Shown here one piece after another: positions 848-61,589 of a DNA stretch of 64,000 bases. Position 1 is the stretch's first letter; the number at the start of each line of letters is the position of its first letter. The notes below the pieces were generated by a model. It was not told the origin of the DNA and ran no database searches. It saw nothing but the letters and a program-made list of their open reading frames with translations. A program made the position numbers and the translations under genes. Location of the stretch: positions 124,001 to 188,000 of IMG/VR virus record IMGVR_UViG_3300035665_000001, one strand, 5' to 3'.

Positions 848-1780
848 GTGGATTTACAAACCAACACTAAACACCGATTCATTAAAGATTTTTCTTTGCC
901 TATTCAGGTAATTCAAGAACCAATGTTTATGTATTATATTGATGAATTGGATAGTTATTATTCAACTATTAAAAAACTTCAATATTTGAAAGATGCAATA
1001 AATCTGTTAGGTAGTGAAGATAAAGTTTTTAGTGAATTCAGTAAAATTAAAGATAGTTTGATTGCTGCAGTTACCGAACAAAAAAAATACCAAGAATTAA
1101 GTGTTGATTCACTTGAACAATATACCGTGAAAAATGGTGTTACACAAAAAAATATTTATAGTTTGGAAAATTCGAATAAAGTTTTTATTTCTATCGATTT
1201 AAAACATGCAAATTTTAATGTTTTGAAAATGTATGATAGTAGTTTAGTTTTAGAATCTGAAAATTATGAAGATTTTGTTGGTACTATGACTGATGTGGAA
1301 TATTTTAAAAAATCAAAATATATTAGGCAGTTTATTTTTGGAAATTTGTTACCTAAGAAGCAGCAAAAGTTACAGCATTGGGTTATAGATTCTATAGTTC
1401 AAGTTTTACTTTCATCGGGATTAAAATTACCAGAATTTAATTCTGCTTCAGCTGATGAAATTGTGATACACGTGGATAAAAATCGTGTTGATGATGTTTT
1501 CAATCATATAAAAAATGAATTAAAGACGAATGTAAAAACCTGTGGTTTCTATGAGTGGTTGAAAATAGAAATGTTTGTATTAAAGTCAATTGGTGGTAAA
1601 AGTTATTTTGTAAAAGAAAATATGTTAGATGGTTCGATAGAGTTTAAAGCAATACCATCATTTATCTTCATGCAAGTCTACAAAAAATATGTTGGTAACC
1701 CTGTAGAATATTTTGATAGAATATTTTTTCATGAGGGTTATCTGGCTGAATTTAAACAACCTGTATTTAGTGAGGGGTAA
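848..1780 (+). CDS. Hypothetical protein with DNA-polymerase-palm-like motifs
   Basis: FISIDLKHANF, KSKYIRQFIFG and SADEIVIHV are spaced like polymerase motifs A/B/C; GAGG RBS; TATAAT upstream. Confidence 0.4.
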   Translation: MDLQTNTKHRFIKDFSLPIQVIQEPMFMYYIDELDSYYSTIKKLQYLKDAINLLGSEDKVFSEFSKIKDSLIAAVTEQKKYQELSVDSLEQYTVKNGVTQKNIYSLENSNKVFISIDLKHANFNVLKMYDSSLVLESENYEDFVGTMTDVEYFKKSKYIRQFIFGNLLPKKQQKLQHWVIDSIVQVLLSSGLKLPEFNSASADEIVIHVDKNRVDDVFNHIKNELKTNVKTCGFYEWLKIEMFVLKSIGGKSYFVKENMLDGSIEFKAIPSFIFMQVYKKYVGNPVEYFDRIFFHEGYLAEFKQPVFSEG

Positions 1781-1783
1781 AGA

Positions 1784-2032
1784 ATGTTTGTAGGTGGGAG
1801 TTTTTTTAATATAGAAAATAAATTTTGGGAATTTCAAGTTGAACGATATTCTGAATGGGAAACATATTTTAATTTTCAAATTTGTTTTAATCGCAAATGC
1901 GATCATGCCGGTTTAAGATGTAATGCAGAAATTTGTGGTTATTGGGTCGATTTACAGATTTACGATTGTCGACACTGGGATTATGACCACGATAAATGGT
2001 TCGAATATACATCTGAGGTTGATGGTGATTGA
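1784..2032 (+). CDS. Hypothetical protein
   Basis: 82-aa ORF directly after the previous gene, with GAGGGG RBS. Confidence 0.6.
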   Translation: MFVGGSFFNIENKFWEFQVERYSEWETYFNFQICFNRKCDHAGLRCNAEICGYWVDLQIYDCRHWDYDHDKWFEYTSEVDGD

Positions 2033-2066
2033 TAAGTTATTCCCCACTCTAAGGTGGGGATTTTTT

Positions 2067-2570
2067 TCATTGAATTCTTCTTATTAATTTTTTAAATTTC
2101 CAGGCTGGTGTAGTTTCAGTTTGAATAAAATTCTGTTCTTCTATTAGTTGGAAATCATCATATTTTATTGGTGTTAAAAAGGTATCTGCCTCACCCTCAA
2201 AATCTACTTCACTGACATACATCGTATCTACTAAATTCATAAAATAATTGTAGATCTGAGCACCACCAATAATAAACAATTCGGTTTCATGTTTTTCTTT
2301 TGCAAATTTAATTGCTTCTGAAATATCTGTAAATACGTGCAAATGGTCAATACTACTATCACTATAAAATCCTTGTTTAGAAACAACTAATGAAACTCGA
2401 TTTGGTAGTGGTTTACCAATACTTTCAAAAGTTTTTCTTCCCATCAAAATATGGTGTCCTGTTGTTAATTCTTTGAATATTTTTAAATCCTCTGAAATTC
2501 GCCACAATAGTTGGTTTTTGAAGCCTAACTCATAGTTATTACCATGTGCAACAATCATCGAAATTTTCAT
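2067..2570 (-). CDS. folA: Dihydrofolate reductase
   Basis: [46 protein letters not shown] motifs; ATGA overlap with thyA. Confidence 0.97.
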
Positions 2571-4240
2571 ACTGCCATTTCTCCTTCAATTTTATCATGA
2601 CACTGATAGTTTAATAATTCGAAGTCATTCATAGTAAAATCATTAATATTTTTGGTGTTTGAATTTAGTTTCATTGTGGGTAGTGGAAAGGGAGTTCTAC
2701 TTAATTGTAGTTTACATTGCTCGAAATGATTTTTATAAATATGAGCATCTCCACTGGTATGAATAAATTCTCCTGGAACTAAGTTGCAAACTTGTGCGAT
2801 CATCATCGTAAGGAGTGCATATGATGCAATGTTAAAACCCAACCCTAAAAAACTGTCCACTGATCGTTGGTATAGTTGACAACTTAATTTTCCGTTCACA
2901 ACATAAAATTGAAATAAGGTATGACATGGTGGTAGTGCCATACCATCCAAATCACTTACATTCCACGCACTTAAAATTATTCTCCGACTATCTGGGTTAG
3001 TTTTAATGGTGTTAACAATTTCTGATAATTGGTCAATAATAATTTGTTTTCTAAATGCGTGATTTGGTGATGCACGAACTGTATAAAACTTACAATCTAT
3101 ATGAAATTCTTGTTTACCATCAATACAGGCTTTTATTAAATCTTTATTGAATTTTTTATTTGGAAATTTATTATTGAGATCATTAAATGATAAATATTCA
3201 AAACGCACACCATCTGAAAATTCAACGACCGTCTTTGTATTAAAATCGATTTCGTGAGCACTATAAAATTTATTCACCTTTGATGGTAGAAATATACATG
3301 TGTCCTTTGAATATTTGTTAGAGTTATAGTATTCCCTGTCAAGACACCAATCATTTATATTATCTTTTGTGCCAATTGACCATTCGTAAAAAAATGGTAA
3401 TAATTCTAAATCATATAAAAACTGTTTAAAGTCAAACCATCGAGAATCGACAAATATTCCTTTACCACCATATAGATGGTAGGATACATTATTAACATCG
3501 TAACACCGTTGTATCATGTTGTACCACATAGTTTGTGCTTTTGCATAATACGAAATATTCTTATCTTTTTTTATTGTAGAATAAAATTTACCAAAGTATA
3601 TTTGCTGACCAAATGTATTATTTCTGAGATTATGTTTACTTGCTATTTCCTTATGTCCAGTCAATATGGATTGTATTTCATAAGAACTATTTTTTGATTT
3701 ATCCAACTTTTTCAAAACCTTATATTCTGTACCATATTTGTTAGTCATAATACGACCAATAAATTCATCATTTGGAACTGGTTGATGATTATCAATGGAT
3801 GGTATTGGTATGGATTCTATGAATTTTTTTTCTTCCATTTCTATTAAAGTTGTAGAGTTTAACGCCCCTGTTTTTCTCCAACCAGAACCATATACATTTC
3901 CGAGCAATTTCATAGTATCACTATTGGTGTATCCCAATTTTTTACCTTGATTATCTGCGTTTGCAGTCCATATAGTTTTTTTACCAATGAGATTTTCTCT
4001 ACTATCCCCATAGTGTATTTCTGCTAATCTTCTTTCATCGGTACTACCTTCAATAAACCATAATAATTCGGAAATAATAGCTTTTAAATATGTTTTTTTT
4101 GTAGTGATTAATGGAAACCCTTGTGATAAATCGAATCGCATTTGATAACCAAAAATCGATTTTGTTCCAACGCCAGTTCTATCCGTTTTTTCATCACCAT
4201 CATCAATTATTTTTCTTAATAAGTCCAAATATTGTTGCAT
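2567..4240 (-). CDS. thyA: Thymidylate synthase with an in-frame HNH-type nuclease insertion of about 270 aa
   Basis: [56 protein letters not shown] motifs; insertion lies between YGSGWR and IDQL. Confidence 0.95.
3040..3874 (-). mobile_element. HNH/His-Me-finger homing-endonuclease-like domain inserted in frame in thyA
   Basis: [24 protein letters not shown]...YSKDTCIF motifs typical of phage HNH-like nucleases. Confidence 0.75.
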
Positions 4241-35018: not shown

Positions 35019-35591
35019 CTACATAAGTCTCAAACCCTTATTGAATGAGTTTTTACCTTTTAAATTGTTGATGATTGTTTTTGGTGATTTTTGTGGTTTT
35101 TCACTGTTGTCATCATTATCTGTTGTGGAGTCGTTATATTGTGAATCATTATTTTCTTTGTTTTTAGTGAGTTTAGTATATTCTTTTTGTTTTGAATTTG
35201 CCCTTACATCAGTATAAGCATTTTTATCGTGTGATACCGTTTCTTCTCCATTTTCATTTGTAGTTGGGATAAATGATAATGTTCCCCAATCAGTTTTAAA
35301 AAAAACATATGAACCAACACCGGATGAATCTCTGGTTTTTAATAATTTTGCTCTAATAATTCCTGAATCTCTTGATGCTGAATTTGGGATGAACGCTAAT
35401 ACATTATCAGCACTTTGAATTTTTGCGATACCACCTTGAATATTTTCTTCTGAAATATCATTGGTATCACCACTAGCACTATTATGGGTAAGTATGTCAT
35501 TAGTAAAAAATAAGTGATCACCATCAACAGTAATATCTCTGGTTTTTCTAATACCAATTTTTTGAATATTTACGATTTCATCCAATACCAT
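35019..35591 (-). CDS. Split-intein IntC (37 aa) fused to the C-terminal extein of a T4 gp41/DnaB-like helicase
   Basis: MVLDEIV.I..IG...T.DITVDGDHLFFTNDILTHN|S resembles gp41-type IntC; extein has ISEENIQGG..KIQSAD and KLLKTR; own RBS and TGTATAAT. Confidence 0.85.
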   Translation of the reverse strand: MVLDEIVNIQKIGIRKTRDITVDGDHLFFTNDILTHNSASGDTNDISEENIQGGIAKIQSADNVLAFIPNSASRDSGIIRAKLLKTRDSSGVGSYVFFKTDWGTLSFIPTTNENGEETVSHDKNAYTDVRANSKQKEYTKLTKNKENNDSQYNDSTTDNDDNSEKPQKSPKTIINNLKGKNSFNKGLRLM

Positions 35592-35675
35592 TATTTCTCC
35601 CAATTAAATTGATTTAGTTGTTTTTAAGAATTATACAATAGTTTTACTTGTAATGATATTAGAAATATGATGCTA

Positions 35676-43427: not shown

Positions 43428-43976
43428 TTAAAGACCGATGAGTGGTGGAACATCATCATCGGAATAGTCTGAGTTTGGGTTCATCATATGTTTAATCTGA
43501 TCTAAAATCTCTTTTTGAGTCCCTTTTATACCTGGTTGATCCATATTTAAATTGTTGATGGTTACTGATTTTATTTCAAGTTTCTGTTTTTCAATTTCCA
43601 TTTTCTCTTTTTGTAGAGTGAAATTCAAAAGAGCCTTCGATGCGTCACTAGCATTTCCCAATGCTTGTTGTGCTACCTCCGAAATTCTCGCAGCAGATTT
43701 ATCATCAATTTTACCCATAATTTCAATTAATTCATCATGATCGTTTAAACTTTTTTGTGCTACTTTCATTAGAATTATTTTTGAAAAATCTGCAAGACCA
43801 AGATCTGTTTCCATTGCTCGAAACATTGAAATATCTTGATCCGTAATCAATGAAGAGGAATAAATGGGTTGGTTTGTCAAAGGATTTATAGAAACTACTG
43901 ATTCTTCAATTTTTTTATCGTCAACTATATTATCGATATTGAGCATCTTTGATAATTTCTTACTTACTATATCCAA
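43428..43976 (-). CDS. Probable terminase small subunit (T4 gp16-like)
   Basis: AARISEVAQQ.L..A.DA...LL, NNL...GTQKEIL pattern; late motif at 44009; AGGAG RBS before TTG 43976; near a terL piece. Confidence 0.55.
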   Translation of the reverse strand: MDIVSKKLSKMLNIDNIVDDKKIEESVVSINPLTNQPIYSSSLITDQDISMFRAMETDLGLADFSKIILMKVAQKSLNDHDELIEIMGKIDDKSAARISEVAQQALGNASDASKALLNFTLQKEKMEIEKQKLEIKSVTINNLNMDQPGIKGTQKEILDQIKHMMNPNSDYSDDDVPPLIGL

Positions 43977-44169
43977 AATGAATCTCCTTTTTATTGTTAT
44001 AAAATACCTATTTATCCAAAATACAAAACCATTATACAAAAAATATTTATTTTTTTGCGTTTATTATTTTAAAAAATAATCATTAACGTCAACATATAGT
44101 AAATTTTGTGGGACGGTGCTTTTTTGTAAAATAGGTAAAAACAACGTGTGGTTACACTGGAAAAAATAT

Positions 44170-45351
44170 ATGAAATCCGATAATTCAATCAGCTATCATT
44201 ATGTTTACAAAATTACAAATATTAATCCTCCTGATGAAAAAAAGTATTACATTGGTGTTAGAACAACCAAAAATAGAACACCTCAAGAGGATAGTAGTTA
44301 CATGGGATCATCAAAACATTTAAAATCCGCGATTAAAAAACAAGGAAAACAACATTTTTTTAAGGAAATATTATCTACTTGGAATTCAAGGGATGAAGCA
44401 AATGTAGAAGAAATAAGATTACATTCATTGTACTCAGTTTCGAGTAATGTCGAATATTACAATATGGCAGAAGCTGTAAGTGTTGGGTTTTGTACATACG
44501 GAAATGTTCCCGTTATCGATACAAATACGGGTAAAACACTTTCAGTGTCGTTAAAAAATTTTAATGAAACTTGTCATTATGTAACAAATTCAAAAGGTTG
44601 GGTATCTGTTATTGATACCCGAACAAATGAAACTACAAGAGTAACAGTGGAAAATTATCATCGATATGGATATTATAAGTGTATCAACACAGGTACCTTA
44701 GTGGTTATTGATACTCGAGACAAAAAGCGAAAAAAAGTGTCGGTAGAAGATTATTACAAACACGAACATTTTGAATGTTTGAGTGTGGGAAAATTAACGG
44801 TTAAAGATACTCGCACAAACAAACTAGTTAAAGTTTCAGTTGATGATTACTATAGATATGATTATTTTCAACATCCCTTCATAGGTCAAGTTACAGTAAT
44901 TGATACACGTGATGGAACAGTGAAAAATGTAAGTAGAGAAGAATTTTTAAATAATAATCATTTTGTTTCACCCTCAAAAGGTAGAGTCAGTGTTATCGAT
45001 TTGCGAGATGGTGTTAAAAAAATGGTTTCACAAGATGAATATCAAAATAATGAGTATTTCGTTTCTCCTGTCAAAGGGTTAGTTACAGTTATTGATACTC
45101 GTGATGGAGTAACTAAAAATGTCACGAGAATGGAATATCAAAGCACCGATAATTATATTTCGGTGGCAAGTAAAAAAGTGAATATTTACAATGCCTCACA
45201 TGAGTTAAAATATACCATTTGGGGAAAATTTAGAGAAACCTGTGTCAAACTAAAAATCCCTGCGAGATTATTTAAAGAATCGTGTAACAATAACTCAAAA
45301 CCCATTGTACACAAAAAATTTAATGGTTGGTATGCGATTGAAGTAAAATAA
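44170..45351 (+). CDS. Free-standing GIY-YIG homing endonuclease with seven 32-aa repeats
   Basis: YVYKITN...YYIG.R, YMGSS..L..AI.K.G...F.KEIL, YYN; repeats every 96 nt from 44500. Confidence 0.85.
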   Translation: MKSDNSISYHYVYKITNINPPDEKKYYIGVRTTKNRTPQEDSSYMGSSKHLKSAIKKQGKQHFFKEILSTWNSRDEANVEEIRLHSLYSVSSNVEYYNMAEAVSVGFCTYGNVPVIDTNTGKTLSVSLKNFNETCHYVTNSKGWVSVIDTRTNETTRVTVENYHRYGYYKCINTGTLVVIDTRDKKRKKVSVEDYYKHEHFECLSVGKLTVKDTRTNKLVKVSVDDYYRYDYFQHPFIGQVTVIDTRDGTVKNVSREEFLNNNHFVSPSKGRVSVIDLRDGVKKMVSQDEYQNNEYFVSPVKGLVTVIDTRDGVTKNVTRMEYQSTDNYISVASKKVNIYNASHELKYTIWGKFRETCVKLKIPARLFKESCNNNSKPIVHKKFNGWYAIEVK

Positions 45352-45357
45352 TCCAGC

Positions 45358-46110
45358 TTATTGGTATTCATCCCCATAGTACAAATCCTGAATATCGATT
45401 TCTCTGATTTCACCTGTTTTTTTGTTTCTAATAGTAATCTGTGTTTTACCATCCAGACAGTAAACAAATTTTAGCGATTTACCCCTAGCTGCGTTCGCAG
45501 TTGTAGCTTCCGCAATGATACGCATACCATTATCAAATTCTACCGAGGTTTCATTGTTCTTAATCATCCCAGGTTTTAACCAGTTTGGAGCAGAATAATA
45601 CATATCTTTTATTCGCTTCAATACTTCAACAGAATGTGCTTGTTTGTGAGCAACAATTAAAATATCCCCTTTTGCTACAGGAAAACATGCTTCATAAAGT
45701 AAATAAAAAGCACCAATGGTTGTATTATGACTGAGAATGCCATTCGTATAATATCGATGATCTTCACTTTCTACCGAAAGGTCATACATAGGTGTTGATT
45801 CGATTGTTTTCTTTACAGAAATTATTTTTTCTAATCCATCTTCTGTTACAATGAAATCATCAACGGTTAAATCTTTTACAAAAATTGAATTGTAATTACT
45901 ATCAAAAACAATATGATTATCTGCACATTCCAATATGTGATTTTCAGTAATCACTTCCCATACACAATAATCAACGGTCTTATTACTACCAATTATTTTT
46001 TGAAATCCCGTGTCTGTATTTACTGACCACCCATCAACTAAAAGTTGTTCAATAAATTTTTGTTTTTCATTCATACTGTATCCATTAAGTTTTTCACAAT
46101 TCAAAATCAT
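45358..46110 (-). CDS. terL: Terminase large subunit piece 2: IntC - ATPase extein (88 aa) - IntN
   Basis: ECADNH, MYDLSV...YYTNGILSHN|TT; extein AHK, NETSVEFDNG.RI.A.AT...A.RGKS; then CLDGKTQITIRNKKTGEI..IDI.DLY*. Confidence 0.9.
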   Translation of the reverse strand: MILNCEKLNGYSMNEKQKFIEQLLVDGWSVNTDTGFQKIIGSNKTVDYCVWEVITENHILECADNHIVFDSNYNSIFVKDLTVDDFIVTEDGLEKIISVKKTIESTPMYDLSVESEDHRYYTNGILSHNTTIGAFYLLYEACFPVAKGDILIVAHKQAHSVEVLKRIKDMYYSAPNWLKPGMIKNNETSVEFDNGMRIIAEATTANAARGKSLKFVYCLDGKTQITIRNKKTGEIREIDIQDLYYGDEYQ

Positions 46111-46233
46111 CGATTATTTCTAATTATACAATTGGTTGTGAAATAATTACAAAAACAGTCAAATTTTTTTGATGATTAGCTATCAAATATCTATACCACA
46201 TCGGTAAAAGTTTGATGACTTATGGTTGGGGTT

Positions 46234-46279: not shown

Positions 46280-46318
46280 ATAAATATCAATATGGTTCAC
46301 TTTAAATGGGTGGTAACA

Positions 46319-47086
46319 ATGATTAAAGATATTATAGTTGGTTCAAGTAGTTATACAGGTGTTCCTGCAACTGGTGCACAAATTACGTTCACAACACCTG
46401 GAACTTATACGTGGATATGTCCATCCAATGTAACTACGGTTTGTGCAGTTGCCATTGGTGGTGGTGGTAGTAGTGGAGCATACTATACTGGTGGTGCTGG
46501 TGGTGGATTATCTTATTTAAACAATATCGCTGTAACGCCAGGTCAATCTTATACCGTAGGTGCAGGTGGTATCGGTTCAGGTGGTATCGGTTGTATTGCA
46601 GGTGGTATCGGTTCAGGTGGTATCGGTTGTATTGCAGGTGGTATCGGTTCAGGTGGTATCGGTTGTATTGCAGGTGGGAATAGTTCAGTATTTGGTATGG
46701 TAGCTGGTGGAGGTGGTGGAAATAGTGCCCCTGGTTATAATAATGCACCACCACAAGGTGGTTATGATAATGCGGGAACTAGCGGGAGATCACCATACAA
46801 CTACTCTACTAACAGTTCAATTTACAACGTAGGTGGTGCTGGTGCTGGTGGTACTGGCATTTTTGGTGGAACAGGTGGTGGAACAGGTGGTGGAACAGGT
46901 GGTTTGCCTGGCGGTATAGATAACTCCAATAATACAACTACTATCAGTGGTTCGGTTGGTATTGGTGGTGGTGGCGGATCAGGGTGTGGATATGACTATA
47001 TAGATTCAAAAGGTGGGAATGGAGCAGTTAGAATAATTTGGGGTTCTGGTAGAGCTTTTCCTAATACAAATACGGAGGATTTATAA
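46319..47086 (+). CDS. Glycine-rich fibre protein (rearranged paralog of 18566)
   Basis: MIKDIIVG leader; PGTYTWICP...; GGNGAVRIIWGSGRAFPNT. Confidence 0.7.
   Translation: MIKDIIVGSSSYTGVPATGAQITFTTPGTYTWICPSNVTTVCAVAIGGGGSSGAYYTGGAGGGLSYLNNIAVTPGQSYTVGAGGIGSGGIGCIAGGIGSGGIGCIAGGIGSGGIGCIAGGNSSVFGMVAGGGGGNSAPGYNNAPPQGGYDNAGTSGRSPYNYSTNSSIYNVGGAGAGGTGIFGGTGGGTGGGTGGLPGGIDNSNNTTTISGSVGIGGGGGSGCGYDYIDSKGGNGAVRIIWGSGRAFPNTNTEDL
46562..46677 (+). repeat. Perfect 36-bp tandem repeat, three copies plus a partial
   Basis: GCAGGTGGTATCGGTTCAGGTGGTATCGGTTGTATT at 46562, 46598, 46634. Confidence 0.95.
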
Positions 47087-56847: not shown

Positions 56848-57210
56848 TTATTTACTTGGTTCTACAGGCCATGCAATTTGCTCAGGTGTTGTAACATAGG
56901 GTTGAACACTTGGAAAATTACGTAATGCATTACGATAAGCTGCCCATTCTGCTTTTTTTGCATCTGATAATGCCGCGTCTGGAAGTTGTGTCCAATCAGA
57001 CATTTTCAATAAATCTGTACGAACAGTTCTAATATAATTAAAGAACTGTTCGTTGGTTGGAGGAACGATTGTTTCCGCCTCAAAATATTCAACATACCCT
57101 AATTCAGCTAAACCGACTTGGTCTTTTAAACCTGTTCTAGCTAATACATCCAAATATGGTATTTTACTTTCTGTAACAATACCACCAACTTCTAAATTAT
57201 AATAAACCAT
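56848..57210 (-). CDS. Tail-fibre assembly chaperone
   Basis: R..R..LL..SDWTQLPD...WA.YR.ALR..P...I.WP..P; start at MVYYN. Confidence 0.85.
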   Translation of the reverse strand: MVYYNLEVGGIVTESKIPYLDVLARTGLKDQVGLAELGYVEYFEAETIVPPTNEQFFNYIRTVRTDLLKMSDWTQLPDAALSDAKKAEWAAYRNALRNFPSVQPYVTTPEQIAWPVEPSK

Positions 57211-59381
57211 TACATATCTCCTGTACCTGTTGATGGGAATGAACGACCAGATCCCCAAATTATACGAACGCAACCACGACCACCTTTATTTAATCCGTAA
57301 CCCATTGGACTACTACTACCAGTTCCGCCACCGCCACCGCCATATAAACCACCTACTTTTGTACCAAAAACACCTATACTCCACCATGGGTTTTCACCAA
57401 TGTCACCATCTGTACCACCGGAACCACACATACCACCCGAATGTGCCCGTGAACTTCCTGATGTACCTTGACCAAATGGACCAACACCACCACCTGCACC
57501 TGTACCATAAGTAGAAGAGTACATATAACCACCTGCTGCACCGCCACCAGATCCATTGTGATTGGCACCATTTTCTCCAGATCCACCGTTTCCTGTATAA
57601 CCGCCGGCACCACCACCAGAACAAGCCCATTGTCCTGAACCATAACCACCATTACCACCACCACCTCTATATGCTCCACCACCACCAGCATTACTACCAT
57701 TGGAACCGCCATTAGCATAGAGTGTAGATGTATTTATGAAGTATGATTGACCACCGGATAAATCACCACCATTCCCATCACCACCTTTACCAACTTGAAC
57801 CGTATAATCTGTACCTGGTGTTACTGGAATGTTATTACCCCACGATAAAGCTCCACCAGCTCCACCACCATAAGACCATTGTGAACCACCACCAGCTCCA
57901 CCACCGATACAAACTACAGAAACAGATGTTACCCCAGGAGGACATCTCCATGTATAAGTACCATGTCCAGAACCATAGAAAGCTTGTCCAACTAATGAAC
58001 CACTACCACCAACAACAGTTCCAGAAACAGTAGTAGAAATAGATGCATTTCCTGTTCCATCGAATGAAACCGAACCAGTGACGTCACCAGTTAAAGAGAT
58101 AGTTCTTGCAGTTGCTAATTTAGTTGCTGCTGCTGCAGTTGCAGTTAGACCTAATTTACCATCAATGTTTGTTTGTAATGTTGTAACTGCTGAAGCTCTT
58201 GTAGATACTTCACTTGCCAAATTGTTGGTTAAAGTGGTAATTGCTGCTTGTCTTGCAGATGTTTCAACAGCTATAGCAGCTGCTTGTGCAGTTGAAACAG
58301 GTTTTGATAAGTCGGCTGTATTATCAACGTTAGTTAAACCAATTGCTGATTTATCTAATACACCATTTACAAAATTAGTACCATTCCATTTAATAATGTC
58401 GTTCACTTGTTTATTTGAAATTAATACATCATTTAATGAACCTAAAGCATGGTTATGATTGGTTTTACTATAGGTAAGATTTGTAAACTCTCTAGTTGCG
58501 ATAGTTTCAAATGTTCCACCAATTTGACCAACTTTGAAGAAATCATCTAATTCATCAAATAATAGAGCAAAATCAGACATATCACCACGATCAACTTGGA
58601 TACCAGCTTTACCTAAAGTAACACCTGAACCAATTTCTCCGGAATTAACTACAATAATGTTATCTTTAACATTTACAATTGTTGAGTTTACAGATGTTTG
58701 TGTACCGTTAACTGTTAAGTTACCACCAATAGTTAAATTACCACTCAATTGTTGACTAGTTCCAGAAATAGTGCTACTAAACACAGTTGGTGCAGATACT
58801 TGTACCTCATTAGTTGCACCAATACGAACATTAGAACCGGTACCAACTGCATTTAAAAATACGTCAGCGTTAATTCCTGATGTAGATATATTTACTGATT
58901 TTTCAGATTCAACTGTAGTTGTGCCAGTCCCAGAAGTTTTCATATCAATTGACTGATTACTATCTGAATGAATGTTAATTGTAGTTGCAGTTGTACCCAA
59001 AATAGCTGTATCACCAATATACAATGTATTTGTCGATAATTTGGCTTCATCAACGAAGATTGTTTTAAATCTTTGTGTTACTGAACCAATATCAATGTTA
59101 GCACCGCTTGGTAAAATTGTACTTGCTACAGTAAGTGATTTTGCATTGAAATCTTGTAACACGCTACCTGCTAAATTGGCTTTTAATGCATCTGCAGCTT
59201 TATAGGCTGTATCCAGTGCATTAACTGTATTCGATAATGTAGTAATAGCAGTTGTTCTAGATGTATTTGCAGAGGCAATATCAGCAGATAAACTATTATC
59301 AGCTGCCTGTCTTGCAGATGCTTCATTTGCAACAGCGGTTGCAACTACACTACCAATTTTTTTAAAAATTGAATCAACCAT
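57210..59381 (-). CDS. Tail/whisker fibre (MVDSIFKK family) with a glycine-rich tip
   Basis: GNLTVNGT, DNII..N, GLTNVDNTADL.KPVSTAQ, ARTISLTGD, Gly-rich GCVRIIWG tip. Confidence 0.82.
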   Translation of the reverse strand: MVDSIFKKIGSVVATAVANEASARQAADNSLSADIASANTSRTTAITTLSNTVNALDTAYKAADALKANLAGSVLQDFNAKSLTVASTILPSGANIDIGSVTQRFKTIFVDEAKLSTNTLYIGDTAILGTTATTINIHSDSNQSIDMKTSGTGTTTVESEKSVNISTSGINADVFLNAVGTGSNVRIGATNEVQVSAPTVFSSTISGTSQQLSGNLTIGGNLTVNGTQTSVNSTIVNVKDNIIVVNSGEIGSGVTLGKAGIQVDRGDMSDFALLFDELDDFFKVGQIGGTFETIATREFTNLTYSKTNHNHALGSLNDVLISNKQVNDIIKWNGTNFVNGVLDKSAIGLTNVDNTADLSKPVSTAQAAAIAVETSARQAAITTLTNNLASEVSTRASAVTTLQTNIDGKLGLTATAAAATKLATARTISLTGDVTGSVSFDGTGNASISTTVSGTVVGGSGSLVGQAFYGSGHGTYTWRCPPGVTSVSVVCIGGGAGGGSQWSYGGGAGGALSWGNNIPVTPGTDYTVQVGKGGDGNGGDLSGGQSYFINTSTLYANGGSNGSNAGGGGAYRGGGGNGGYGSGQWACSGGGAGGYTGNGGSGENGANHNGSGGGAAGGYMYSSTYGTGAGGGVGPFGQGTSGSSRAHSGGMCGSGGTDGDIGENPWWSIGVFGTKVGGLYGGGGGGTGSSSPMGYGLNKGGRGCVRIIWGSGRSFPSTGTGDM

Positions 59382-59570: not shown

Positions 59571-60890
59571 TTATTTTTTTAAAATTAATGGGTTTTGACT
59601 ACCATATATTAATGCCGAATCAATATCCTCAATATCAAATGTTCTTTCACATTCATGACACTGATAACATTGTGATTTACATACAGATAATATTTTTTCT
59701 AATCTTATTCCTTTTTCAGTCATCCAAATATTATTATATAGATATTTTTCTTTAATTTCGGTGTAAATGTCGGGTGTTAAGTATCTATATTCATGATCAT
59801 CTGTTACTCGATTTAGTTTCCAGGTACTCATTGGAGCTGCTTCTAAATTATAAATATTTTCAAAGGTTTTGTCGATGATGATATAATCTTTTTCACCAGT
59901 CAAACCAAATTTTTTTGTTGCACTAACTGCTGCCGCACCAAATGTCCAGGCTAAATGAATGTTTTTATCTATTATATCCTGTTCACTGAAAGTTGAAAAA
60001 CTATCTAATCTACCCGAATATTTTAAAATATCTACATTTTCAAAATATTGGTCTTGTGTTTCTCTATGATTTGCTTCAATATTAACACCATTTCTAGGTA
60101 GTTGACCAAATATTGGATTTCTCCAATTGTTACATGTAAAATTGGCTAATGTTCTAAAATAATTAACACTGATCGATGAACCAATATCATCATGTTCCTT
60201 TTTAAAGGGGCATCTATACAAACATCCTTCAGTAACTAACAGTGATGTTTTTAATTGTTTTGCATTAGGATCTAATTCTTTTTTTATGGTATTATATTTA
60301 TCAATGATTTTCTTTGTTTTTTTAAGTTCTGGTATATTTCTATTATAGGATCTGTCTAATAATATGGTATCATATCCCAAACTGATAAATTCGACCACCT
60401 GTTGTGTATCTGAAACAATATGATTGACCGTGTTTTTCCAACGCATTTCTGGACATCTATGTTGTAATGCACCACTTCTTAATAAATGTGTCCAAGCAAT
60501 TGTACAACTTCTTAACCCTCTGTCATAAAAAGCACCAATCCAATCGAGAAATTGGTTTCCAATTTCAGGATTAGTTTGTAGTTCTTCAGGCACTTCTAAA
60601 GTGTTTAATGTCAAAGAAATTTGTACACCTGTTTCTTCTTGAATTTTAAATAAATTGTCTACCTGTGCATCTGTTGCTTCAACACCCATACAATTACCAT
60701 ATTTCTTTTTTGTACCATTACTTTCAAAATAGAAATATTTACCGAAATAAATGTCTTCAATTTCAGCCAATGTTTCTTTTGGTGTTTGTTTTATAAGAAG
60801 ATAAAAATGGTTGGGTGCATTTTCCATATGTAGTTCTGGATGTGCTATCGAAAATCTTTTTTTAAAATTTTGTGTCTGGGTATGTTCCAT
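59571..60890 (-). CDS. U32-peptidase-like (possible Fe-S) protein
   Basis: LTLN, NTVN, I.LDR..NRN, LLVTEGCLYRCPFKKEHD, DILKYSGR, C-terminal C..QC..CH.CE. Confidence 0.5.
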   Translation of the reverse strand: MEHTQTQNFKKRFSIAHPELHMENAPNHFYLLIKQTPKETLAEIEDIYFGKYFYFESNGTKKKYGNCMGVEATDAQVDNLFKIQEETGVQISLTLNTLEVPEELQTNPEIGNQFLDWIGAFYDRGLRSCTIAWTHLLRSGALQHRCPEMRWKNTVNHIVSDTQQVVEFISLGYDTILLDRSYNRNIPELKKTKKIIDKYNTIKKELDPNAKQLKTSLLVTEGCLYRCPFKKEHDDIGSSISVNYFRTLANFTCNNWRNPIFGQLPRNGVNIEANHRETQDQYFENVDILKYSGRLDSFSTFSEQDIIDKNIHLAWTFGAAAVSATKKFGLTGEKDYIIIDKTFENIYNLEAAPMSTWKLNRVTDDHEYRYLTPDIYTEIKEKYLYNNIWMTEKGIRLEKILSVCKSQCYQCHECERTFDIEDIDSALIYGSQNPLILKK

Positions 60891-60956: not shown

Positions 60957-61298
60957 TTAATGTTTGGTCATATCATGAAATTCTTTAATAGTAAACTCCA
61001 TTATTTCACCAGTTAAATCATTCCTTACAGTGATGATTGAATTTCCTTTTACACATTTACTCATTTGACGACTAGCTAAAAGAATAGATCTTTCAGAATT
61101 TTGAAAAAGATCTAACATTTCAAATTGATATGGTTTGATAACCTTTGCAAAATTAACAGGTCCATCGGATGTATTAATATCACAATAATAAGTAAACCGT
61201 TTTAATCCTGTTGGTCTTCTCATTAATCTAGCCATTTCCATAGTTTGTTCTAATGAAAGTGATATTTCCTGATTTGCTCTCCTAATATAATCTGCCAT
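60957..61298 (-). CDS. terL: Terminase large subunit piece 1: N-terminal extein (81 aa) plus 32-aa IntN
   Basis: PYQ..ML, SILLASRQMSK| followed by CVKGNSIITVRNDLTGEI..FTI.EF*; late motif at 61331. Confidence 0.88.
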   Translation of the reverse strand: MADYIRRANQEISLSLEQTMEMARLMRRPTGLKRFTYYCDINTSDGPVNFAKVIKPYQFEMLDLFQNSERSILLASRQMSKCVKGNSIITVRNDLTGEIMEFTIKEFHDMTKH

Positions 61299-61589
61299 AA
61301 TATGGTATCCTTTTGTTGTATGATTTATGCTATTTATTTTACATTTGATTTGGTGGTGTAATAATCTATATTTATAAGGTGTTAAAACATGATTATTATC
61401 TTATGGTGATAAATTCTATTTTAGATGATATTTTCTTTTTCTTTTTGCTGAAAGCAGATGTTATCCTCAAGGGAGCTTCTTAAAAAGAAGCTCCTCTTTA
61501 AGATTCTTTAATATCTATTCTTTAGGAAAATATTTTTCGTTTTTATACTATATTAATAAGGGGTTTTTTCGAGGGTGTTCAAAAAAATT

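What the first reader, a model, noticed from the sequence alone, without database searches (positions are those of the whole stretch)
45358..46110. Natural IntC-extein-IntN (SICLOPPS-like) protein: orthogonal intein pair or self-cyclising switch
Seen: piece 2 carries IntC at its N-terminus and IntN at its C-terminus. Its IntN (CLDGKTQITIRNKKTGEIREIDIQDLY) resembles the piece 1 IntN (CVKGNSIITVRNDLTGEIMEFTIKEFH). Established: this topology is used to cyclise proteins when the halves are compatible. Inferred: either the two inteins are strictly orthogonal despite their similarity, which would be useful for three-part protein ligation, or cross-reaction gives an 88-aa cyclic extein and piece-skipping products that could gate packaging.
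Basis: partly seen in the sequence, partly recalled or inferred. Interest (0 to 1): 0.85.

Follow-up and report, generated by a model that had tools for sequence, protein, structure and literature searches.

The report
Four-piece terminase joined by split inteins
This gene encodes the second of four separately encoded fragments of a lake jumbo phage's DNA-packaging enzyme; it carries halves of two different split inteins, apparently so that protein splicing can stitch the fragments together, and I found no paper describing such a natural multi-piece assembly.

Summary
ORF 45358..46110 (-) reads IntC (129 aa, ends SHN), then an 88-aa extein, then IntN (33 aa, starts CLDGKT). The extein matches T4 gp17 from just after the Walker A lysine to just before the Walker B Asp-Glu.

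The gene is in four pieces, not three. Piece 1 is at window 60957..61298. Pieces 3 and 4 lie 42 kb and 12 kb beyond the window. Piece 3 is also IntC-extein-IntN. Joining the exteins in silico gives a collinear 602-aa T4-type large terminase (TerL), and the 306-kb record holds no other TerL.

All three inteins are atypically split, with a short IntN and a long IntC. Their closest solved relatives are VidaL and the Cat consensus intein.

The middle-piece topology is common. About 85 of the 120 best database clusters share it, as does the cultured Salicola phage SCTP-2.

The IntN1/IntN2 resemblance is a family trait: the two site consensuses agree at about 20 of 27 positions. Their IntC partners belong to different insertion-site clades.

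Best reading: tandem protein trans-splicing by functionally orthogonal inteins, a by-product of repeated intein and homing-endonuclease invasion. Self-cyclisation cannot be excluded. A packaging "gate" has no support.

The parts
45358..46110 (-). TerL piece 2: IntC(a) - extein 2 - IntN(b). 250 aa from the first ATG; probably 238 aa from Met13 at window 46074.
45724..46110 (-). IntC of intein a (Walker A / P-loop site), aa 1-129. Block B His66, His128-Asn129; followed by the +1 Thr130.
   Evidence: Sequence matches to VidaL and CatC. Foldseek and VIA-align matches to intein structures, model 21-129 on VidaL 28-141. Catalytic residues invariant in 60 homologues. Aligns end to end with the contiguous intein in P0032 and P0037.
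45460..45723 (-). Extein 2, 88 aa, equivalent to T4 gp17 T167..Y253. This is the ATPase segment between the Walker A Lys and the Walker B Asp-Glu.
   Evidence: phmmer against gp17, E 5e-12. VIA-align Z 10.1, rmsd 1.3 A, model 129-219 on gp17 166-257.
45361..45459 (-). IntN of intein b (Walker B site), 33 aa starting at Cys218. Its cognate IntC opens piece 3, outside the window (genome 230010-230798, + strand).
   Evidence: C218 invariant. ...FVY + CDEIAF... restores T4 MIY-IDECAF. A homologous stretch forms the N-terminal part of a contiguous intein in Vibrio phage vB_VmeM-32 TerL.
60957..61298 (-). TerL piece 1: extein 1 (81 aa, ends SRQMSK = Walker A) plus IntN of intein a (32 aa, window 60960-61055).
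44170..45351 (+). Free-standing GIY-YIG (SegE-like) homing-endonuclease gene, convergent with piece 2 and ending 6 nt from its stop codon. A 40%-identical paralogue abuts piece 4.
   Evidence: Pfam PF19835, E 5e-9, above cut-off. PHROG homing endonuclease, E 1e-18. Paralogue comparison, E 2e-87.

Best explanation
The ORF is the second of four separately encoded fragments of the phage's T4-type large terminase (TerL).

Its N-terminal 129 aa (about 117 aa from Met13) are the long C-fragment of an atypically split intein inserted after the Walker A lysine (site a). Its last 33 aa are the short N-fragment of a second atypically split intein inserted just before the Walker B Asp-Glu (site b).

Proposed assembly:
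- Piece 1 (extein 1 + IntN-a) docks onto IntC-a of piece 2 and is spliced to it.
- IntN-b of piece 2 docks onto IntC-b of piece 3 and is spliced to it.
- A third split intein (site c, near the ATPase/nuclease boundary) joins piece 3 to piece 4.
- The product is a 602-aa TerL. Its ATPase site exists only after splicing at a and b.

The IntC-extein-IntN topology is a by-product of independent intein and homing-endonuclease invasions that fractured one gene several times. Genome rearrangement then scattered the pieces. It is not a dedicated cyclisation device.

Shown here: anatomy, homology, conservation of the catalytic residues, collinearity of the exteins, and wide distribution.

Inferred: that splicing actually occurs, and that the three inteins are orthogonal enough in vivo.
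For: - Four pieces were found, and their exteins map collinearly onto contiguous TerL homologues. No other TerL is present in the 306-kb record. The mature length is 602 aa.
- The junctions restore SRQMSK-TT (Walker A) and FVY-CDEIAF (Walker B) when compared with T4 gp17.
- HINT fold: one search reports VidaL first at Foldseek E 2.4e-9 and Cat second at E 7.7e-7, with T4 gp17 also matched; one search gives VIA-align Z 15.2 and 13.7.
- IntC3 matches CatC at E 8.8e-8 and IntC4 at E 7.7e-4.
- Catalytic residues Cys1, block B His, terminal Asn and the +1 nucleophile are invariant or nearly so.
- Close relatives P0032 and P0037 carry intein a as one contiguous domain. Pieces 1 and 2 align to it end to end.
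- The same topology occurs in about 85 of the top 120 cluster representatives, out of 645 hits. It also occurs in cultured Salicola phage SCTP-2, with pieces at about 429, 256 and 216 kb.
- Collinear four-piece loci exist (L019, L036).
- IntC domains cluster by insertion site; the site-a clade has support 98/93.
- A homing-endonuclease gene lies next to each of pieces 2, 3 and 4.
- The locus is reproduced without differences in contigs from independent lake metagenome runs and in a second IMG/VR contig.
Against: - No experiment shows splicing for any of these three inteins.
- Pfam intein and terminase hits on piece 2 are below the gathering cut-offs. Piece 3 has no Pfam hit.
- The IntN consensus of sites a and b is almost the same, so orthogonality is not evident from sequence.
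- A published review reports that the IntN fragments of GOS-TerL and AceL-TerL are interchangeable (PMC11766414).
- The record is estimated to be 85% complete, so another terminase type in the missing part cannot be formally excluded.
Confidence: 0.8

Rival explanations
1. IntN-b and IntC-a on piece 2 are compatible. Piece 2 then partly or largely self-splices into an 88-aa cyclic extein, or gives piece-skipping products. This would be either a tolerated side reaction or a regulatory sink that delays terminase assembly until piece 1 is in excess.
For: - The consensus of IntN at site a and site b agrees at about 20 of 27 positions. The main discriminators are F versus L at position 26 and Asp at position 3.
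- IntN1 and IntN2 share 12 of 27 core residues.
- IntN fragments of characterised TerL atypical inteins are reported to be interchangeable (PMC11766414).
- Two site-b inteins nest inside the site-a clade, so inteins have moved between the sites.
- The reaction would be intramolecular.
- From general knowledge of P-loop ATPases (inference), the extein's two ends lie together at the ATP site.
Against: - IntC2 and IntC3 are alignable by BLASTP only over their last 50 aa, at 40% identity, and they fall in different clades.
- An essential gene has kept this topology in many lineages down to 38% identity, and in a cultured phage. That is hard to reconcile with an efficient intramolecular dead end.
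- IntC-a is translated before IntN-b, so it can capture piece 1 first (inference).
- AlphaFold2 did not place IntN-b in the IntC-a groove. This carries little weight because the cis positive control failed too.
Confidence: 0.13
2. The intein halves serve only as non-covalent docking modules. The four fragments assemble into an active terminase without peptide-bond formation.
For: Fragmented phage enzymes can work without ligation, for example the Aeh1 NrdA case cited in PMC2677866. Intein b ends in Lys-Asn rather than His-Asn.
Against: Cys1, the block B His, the terminal Asn and the +1 Thr/Cys are invariant or nearly so across homologues down to 38% identity. Two of the three breaks lie inside the Walker A and Walker B motifs, where more than 100 aa of retained intein would obstruct the ATP site (inference).
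Confidence: 0.05
3. The pieces are decaying remnants of a terminase gene destroyed by mobile elements, or an assembly artefact. Packaging would then use another enzyme.
For: The pieces are scattered over 60 kb on both strands. The record is about 85% complete.
Against: - All four reading frames are open, and all ATPase, nuclease and intein motifs are intact.
- No other TerL is found in the record.
- The same arrangement is conserved in hundreds of relatives and in the cultured phage SCTP-2.
- Independent contigs reproduce the locus.
Confidence: 0.02

Closest known systems
AceL-TerL, GOS-TerL and the consensus 'Cat' atypically split inteins (Thiel 2014; Bachmann & Mootz 2015; Stevens 2018, as cited in PMC11766414). 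PDB 6dsl.
   Same: The host protein is a phage large terminase. IntN is about 25-37 aa and carries only block A; IntC is about 104-122 aa. CatC matches IntC3 (E 8.8e-8), IntC2 (E 8.3e-5) and IntC4 (E 7.7e-4), with VIA-align Z 13.7.
   Different: Those were characterised as single pairs. Here three such inteins sit in one protein, so two of the four fragments carry an IntC and an IntN of different inteins. The CatC chain continues with Cys-Glu after the intein, like the CEFL C-exteins seen at site c in relatives. The characterised inteins may therefore be site-c alleles, whereas the ORF in question carries site-a and site-b halves.
VidaL atypically split intein (PDB 6vgv)
   Same: Best structural and sequence match of IntC2: E 1.5e-5; Foldseek E 2.4e-9; Z 15.2; 27-28% identity. 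It has the same very N-terminal split point.
   Different: From my memory, its host protein is UvsX and its IntN is shorter. It is a single pair.
'Fractured genes' (Dassa et al. 2009, PMC2677866)
   Same: A phage gene broken by a split intein with a free-standing GIY-YIG or Vsr-like homing-endonuclease gene beside it. That paper reports one terminase locus with an unusually long, 122-aa IntC.
   Different: There, two halves flank the endonuclease gene in one locus. Here there are three breaks and four pieces dispersed over about 60 kb on both strands, and a middle piece flanked by halves of two inteins is not described in that paper.
SICLOPPS and engineered tandem (three-segment) protein trans-splicing
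   Same: The IntC-target-IntN order is that of SICLOPPS. It is also the design of the middle segment in engineered tandem trans-splicing with two orthogonal inteins (for example PMC12707363).
   Different: SICLOPPS uses two halves of one intein. Here the halves belong to two inteins at different insertion sites. The tandem scheme is an engineered one; I found no natural example in the papers searched.
Contiguous P-loop inteins of TerL in cultured phages (for example Klebsiella phage Magnus, annotated 'intein'; Vibrio phage Kuja)
   Same: Same insertion site, and 38-44% identity over IntC2 plus extein 2.
   Different: Those are cis-splicing and encoded within one gene.

Membership tests
Intein (HINT protein-splicing domain, class 1) | Nucleophile (Cys/Ser) at intein position 1 | tested here: met
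   Cys82 of piece 1 (intein a). Cys218 of piece 2 (intein b), invariant in 60 homologues.
Intein (HINT protein-splicing domain, class 1) | Block B His, C-terminal (His)-Asn, and a +1 Cys/Ser/Thr on the C-extein | tested here: met
   H66 and N129 are invariant; H128 and T130 are at least 90% conserved. Intein b ends KN|C and intein c ends HN|C.
Intein (HINT protein-splicing domain, class 1) | HINT fold | tested here: met
   AlphaFold2 model with pLDDT above 90 over most of IntC2. Z 12-15 to more than 30 intein structures, covering intein residues from about 20 to the end.
Intein (HINT protein-splicing domain, class 1) | Catalyses protein splicing | not testable with these tools
   Needs expression and mass spectrometry.
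Atypically split intein (AceL-TerL / GOS-TerL / Cat / VidaL type) | Split after the first beta-hairpin: IntN of about 15-40 aa carrying block A only, IntC over 100 aa carrying blocks B, F and G, on separate polypeptides | tested here: met
   IntN lengths are 32, 33 and 46 aa; IntC lengths are 129 (about 117 from Met13), 108 and 111 aa; all on separate ORFs. The break maps to a linker in the contiguous relatives P0032 and P0037.
Atypically split intein (AceL-TerL / GOS-TerL / Cat / VidaL type) | Sequence homology to characterised members | tested here: met
   CatC E 8.8e-8 (IntC3), 8.3e-5 (IntC2) and 7.7e-4 (IntC4). VidaL E 1.5e-5 (IntC2).
Fractured gene sensu Dassa 2009 | A free-standing homing-endonuclease gene next to the split-intein gene piece | tested here: met
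   GIY-YIG genes beside pieces 2 and 4. A Vsr-like / PD-(D/E)xK candidate lies beside piece 3, with weak Pfam hits and a PHROG endonuclease hit at E 1.6e-4.
Fractured gene sensu Dassa 2009 | Both gene halves in one locus, flanking the endonuclease gene | tested here: not met
   In this genome the pieces lie at 185, 170, 230 and 201 kb. The feature is met in relatives such as L019, L036 and L054.
SICLOPPS-type self-cyclising protein | IntC at the N-terminus and IntN at the C-terminus of one chain | tested here: met
SICLOPPS-type self-cyclising protein | The two halves belong to one intein or to a compatible pair | tested here: inconclusive
   By extein continuity and the IntC phylogeny they are halves of different inteins. 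However, the IntN consensus of the two sites is nearly the same. The AlphaFold2 docking test was uninformative because the positive control failed. Biochemical compatibility was not testable.
T4-type large terminase (gp17-like) | Walker A, Walker B with catalytic Glu, and a C-terminal RNase H-like nuclease domain, in collinear order | tested here: met
   Met only after in-silico ligation: SRQMSK-TT, FVY-CDE...STPNG... and the nuclease match to RB49 gp17 (3c6a, E 6e-4). The exteins are collinear with contiguous homologues.

The most novel reading that the evidence does not exclude
IntN-b and IntC-a of piece 2 are cross-reactive in cis, and the phage exploits this. Self-cyclisation of the 88-aa Walker A-to-Walker B segment (or competition between IntN-a and IntN-b for IntC-a) would act as a stoichiometric timer that keeps the terminase ATPase unassembled until piece 1 accumulates. 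That would make this a natural SICLOPPS-like regulatory circuit. A milder version is that the three inteins are a naturally evolved, mutually orthogonal set of short-tag split inteins.
Probability: 0.07. Interest if true: 0.85.

Novelty: new variant of a known kind. Interest (0 to 1): 0.62.

Why it matters
If splicing is confirmed, this would be a natural case of tandem protein trans-splicing. An essential enzyme would be built from four gene products by three split inteins, with two breaks inside its ATP-binding motifs and the pieces scattered over the genome.

It shows how far intein and homing-endonuclease invasion can fragment a gene without killing the virus.

It also offers a ready-made test set. 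The family contains hundreds of natural variants, in cis, split and absent states at three sites, and the inteins have very short IntN tags. Evolution has presumably made them orthogonal within one cell, which is what three- and four-segment protein ligation and labelling require.

For annotation, genome pipelines will keep calling such phages terminase-less or will label a fragment as the whole enzyme. SCTP-2 gp267 and gp224 are each annotated simply as "terminase large subunit", with no mention of inteins.

Tried and rejected
- Pfam scans of the whole record (PF17289, PF03237) gave only a sub-threshold hit on piece 2. Piece 3 has no Pfam hit. The pieces had to be found with motif and phmmer scans of the six-frame translation.
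- Searching the PDB with the 32-33-aa IntN peptides gave nothing meaningful.
- The search for related loci with the 19-sequence alignment failed because it had no conserved stretch. The single protein found only two loci. A 10-sequence alignment worked.
- AlphaFold2 as a test of cis-complementation did not work. In the piece 2 model the IntN-b hairpin is confident (pLDDT about 81-87), but it appears packed with the ATPase segment: the alignment to T7 terminase models spans residues 114-250. pTM is 0.48.
- The positive control also failed. In P0032, where intein a is contiguous, the cognate IntN was not placed in the HINT fold (pLDDT 46-61; intein alignments start at model residue about 122-128). 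The negative result is therefore uninformative.
- Net charge of the fragments gave no clear complementarity pattern.
- Nine literature searches found no description of a natural IntC-extein-IntN protein or of natural tandem trans-splicing. The key atypical-intein papers (PMC4661395, PMC7232844) are not held, so prior mention cannot be excluded.
- The pseudogene and assembly-artefact reading was rejected (see rival explanations).
- One contig in run X5 suggests a 936-bp skip inside the endonuclease gene (44006 to 44943). Only 20 letters anchor one side and the gene is internally repetitive, so I do not rely on it.

Full report
**Source.** The window is bases 124001-188000 of a 306,333-bp IMG/VR virus record, 30.7% G+C and estimated 85% complete. 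The stretch around the finding occurs in lake-water and freshwater metagenome runs from 2016 to 2024. Contigs from independent runs reproduce it without differences, and a second IMG/VR contig does so at 100% identity. This is a freshwater jumbo phage, and the assembly at this locus is sound.

**Observation.** ORF 45358..46110 (-) encodes 250 aa.
- Residues 130-217 (88 aa) align to T4 gp17 residues 167-253, from the Thr after the Walker A Lys166 to the Tyr before Ile254-Asp255-Glu256 (E 5e-12). The region hits a PHROG terminase large subunit family at E 3e-29.
- Residues 1-129 end in SHN. By sequence they match the atypically split VidaL intein (E 1.5e-5) and CatC (E 8e-5).
- An AlphaFold2 model built on 60 homologues has mean pLDDT 85. 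It matches VidaL (Foldseek E 2.4e-9; VIA-align Z 15.2), Cat and more than 30 other inteins. Model residues ~20-129 fall on intein residues ~20-end. This domain is therefore a HINT fold missing only its first ~20-27 residues.
- The last 33 aa start with Cys218 and have the block A pattern.
- In 60 homologues His66 (block B), Asn129 and Cys218 are invariant; His128 and Thr130 are at least 90% conserved.
- The true start is probably Met13 (window 46074). Close homologues are 238 aa, and residues 1-14 are disordered in the model.
- Piece 1 (60957..61298, -) ends ...SRQMSK|CVKGNS.... IntN1 and IntN2 share 12 identical residues out of 32 aligned, i.e. 12 of 27 core positions.

**The whole gene is in four pieces.** Scanning the complete record found two further pieces outside the window.
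- Piece 3 is at genome 230010-230798 (+): IntC ...FVSKN | CDEIAF...STPNG...KIEFE | IntN CMYPDT....
- Piece 4 is at genome 200201-201511 (-): IntC ...LKTHN | CAFITFE..., followed by the nuclease domain. It matches RB49 gp17 nuclease (3c6a) at E 6e-4 and CatC at E 7.7e-4.
- Piece 3 matches CatC at E 8.8e-8, and its extein aligns to the gp17 Walker B and C-motif region.
- Joined in silico the exteins total 81+88+108+325 = 602 aa (from my memory T4 gp17 is 610 aa). They map collinearly onto contiguous TerL homologues. Nothing else in the record resembles TerL.
- The terminase therefore has three atypically split inteins: a after the Walker A Lys, b before the Walker B Asp-Glu, and c near the ATPase/nuclease boundary. 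Both piece 2 and piece 3 are IntC-extein-IntN proteins.

**Surroundings.** Each of pieces 2, 3 and 4 abuts a free-standing endonuclease gene.
- A SegE-like GIY-YIG gene lies convergent with piece 2 at window 44170..45351 (Pfam E 5e-9).
- A 40%-identical paralogue is convergent with piece 4.
- A candidate Vsr-like / PD-(D/E)xK endonuclease gene lies directly downstream of piece 3.
- This is the signature of the "fractured genes" of Dassa et al. 2009. That paper recorded one terminase locus with an unusually long IntC (PMC2677866). Here, however, the pieces are dispersed over about 60 kb on both strands.

**Distribution.** A search of 5.8 billion proteins returned 645 homologues.
- Of the 120 best cluster representatives, about 85 have the IntC-extein 2-IntN topology. 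Eight have exteins 1+2 fused (no intein a) but keep IntN-b. Two (P0032, P0037; 61-67% identical) carry intein a as one contiguous domain.
- Pieces 1 and 2 align end to end with P0032 and P0037. The gene break falls in the linker after the first hairpin and helix.
- In 80 IMG/VR loci every combination of absent, cis and split inteins at sites a, b and c is seen. This includes collinear four-piece loci (L019, L036).
- Cultured Salicola phage SCTP-2 (MF360958) has the same middle piece, gp267, annotated only as "terminase large subunit". Its piece 1 is at 429 kb. Its third piece, gp224 at 216 kb, additionally holds a cis intein.
- In Vibrio phage vB_VmeM-32 TerL, an IntN-b-like stretch forms the N-terminal part of a contiguous Walker B intein.

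**Orthogonal or cross-reactive?**
- The IntN resemblance is real, but it is a family property. The consensuses of 15 site-a and 59 site-b IntN sequences agree at about 20 of 27 positions. The main discriminators are Phe versus Leu at position 26 and Asp at position 3.
- The partners differ more. IntC2 and IntC3 align by BLASTP only over their last 50 aa, at 40% identity.
- In a maximum-likelihood tree the site-a IntC domains form a supported clade (98/93), separate from most site-b and site-c domains. Two Walker-B-adjacent inteins nest inside the site-a clade, so site jumps have happened.
- A review reports that GOS-TerL and AceL-TerL IntN fragments are interchangeable (PMC11766414). Promiscuity within this family is therefore plausible.
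- AlphaFold2 could not settle the question. In the piece 2 model the IntN-b hairpin is confident, but it seems packed against the ATPase segment rather than in the IntC groove. The positive control, the contiguous P0032, also failed to dock its cognate IntN.
- My inference: any cross-reaction within piece 2 would be intramolecular and hence strongly favoured. This topology has persisted in an essential gene across lineages down to 38% identity and in a cultured phage. The pair is therefore probably orthogonal enough in vivo. IntC-a also emerges from the ribosome before IntN-b, which may help.
- A role in gating packaging has no support.

**Regulation (minor).** T4-late-promoter-like TATAAATA motifs, or one-mismatch variants, lie 18-78 nt upstream of the first ATG of all four pieces. 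The octamer is under-represented genome-wide: 57 found against about 136 expected from base composition. This hints at co-expression late in infection but is not a test.

**Novelty.** Atypically split TerL inteins, fractured genes, multi-intein genes and engineered tandem trans-splicing are all known. In nine literature searches I found no description of a natural protein carrying halves of two different split inteins, nor of a natural four-piece assembly. The key subscription papers could not be read. I rate it a new variant of a known kind, of clear interest to intein and phage-packaging specialists and to protein engineers.

Noticed in passing
window 35019..35603 (-): A 194-aa ORF that starts with an intein C-fragment ending ...NDILTHN|SASGDT.... 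It is probably the C-terminal piece of another fractured gene. I suspect a replicative helicase, but Pfam and PHROGs gave no significant hit.
   Followed up: partly
L003:2535-3854 (+) and L003:4881-5612 (+) = genome about 241.5-244.6 kb: A second IntC-extein-IntN protein in the same genome. It has a RecA-like core (Pfam RecA E 2.8e-11) with a long atypical-type IntC in front (...ISSHN|SGKS) and a canonical long IntN behind (Hint_2, Intein_splicing). The next piece starts with ...NIISSN|C.
   Followed up: partly
genome + 108775-109887, + 109977-110465, + 117459-118694 (L004); - 1113-3158: Further ORFs with intein C-terminal motifs (...ILVHN|C, ...VASHN|T, ...ILTHN|S, ...FIHHN|T). This jumbo phage seems to carry many inteins or fractured genes.
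   Followed up: no
window 44500-45150 (+), inside the GIY-YIG gene: The presumed DNA-binding part of the homing endonuclease consists of about nine tandem repeats of roughly 33 aa (G.V.VIDTRDG..K.V...EY......). The paralogue next to piece 4 has one repeat fewer. One contig in run X5 hints at a 936-bp deletion here, with weak support.
   Followed up: partly
window 46292..47086 (+): A glycine-rich ORF with a perfect triple tandem repeat (GGIGSGGIGCIA x3, about 46568-46675). Its C-terminal ...VRIIWGSGR.FP... motif recurs at the end of the 723-aa fibre-like ORF 57210..59381. The repeat region varies between metagenome runs (other letters between 46506 and 46832) and is 93% identical in contig L015.
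   Followed up: partly
window 43428..44039 (-): A 203-aa ORF just beyond the endonuclease gene with a weak match to a terminase small subunit PHROG (E 6e-4). It is a possible TerS next to TerL piece 2.
   Followed up: no
L017:2063-2965 (+) and L017:2965-3720 (+): A related 250-kb phage contig carries two tandem paralogues with near-identical IntC-a and extein 2. One continues into extein 3 without intein b and then stops. The other ends in IntN-b. This may be a homing or recombination intermediate.
   Followed up: no
Walker B region of TerL in relatives (P0097, P0111, L031, L044, L081; L006): At least three different intein insertion points lie within about 6 residues of the Walker B motif: ..LLY|C-DE, ..LDE|C-AF and ..RG.S(AN)|C. 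The inteins at the third point nest within the site-a clade in the IntC tree.
   Followed up: partly
L014:1994-4078 (-) = Salicola phage SCTP-2 gp224: SCTP-2's third terminase piece starts with an IntC ending in Ser-Gln rather than Asn. It also contains a cis intein of about 220 aa at a fourth site (…TISC|LAPGT…LGSN|TGGK).
   Followed up: no
window 61299-61376 and 46111-46128; genome upstream of pieces 3 and 4: TATAAATA (T4 late-promoter-like), or a one-mismatch variant, lies 18-78 nt upstream of the first ATG of all four terminase pieces. The octamer is under-represented in the genome (57 found against about 136 expected).
   Followed up: partly
window 59571..60890 (-): A 439-aa ORF directly downstream of piece 1, where a homing-endonuclease gene might be expected. 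It has no Pfam hit and matches only PHROGs of unknown function (E 7.5e-19). A Cys-rich C-terminus (CKSQCYQCHEC) is present.
   Followed up: partly
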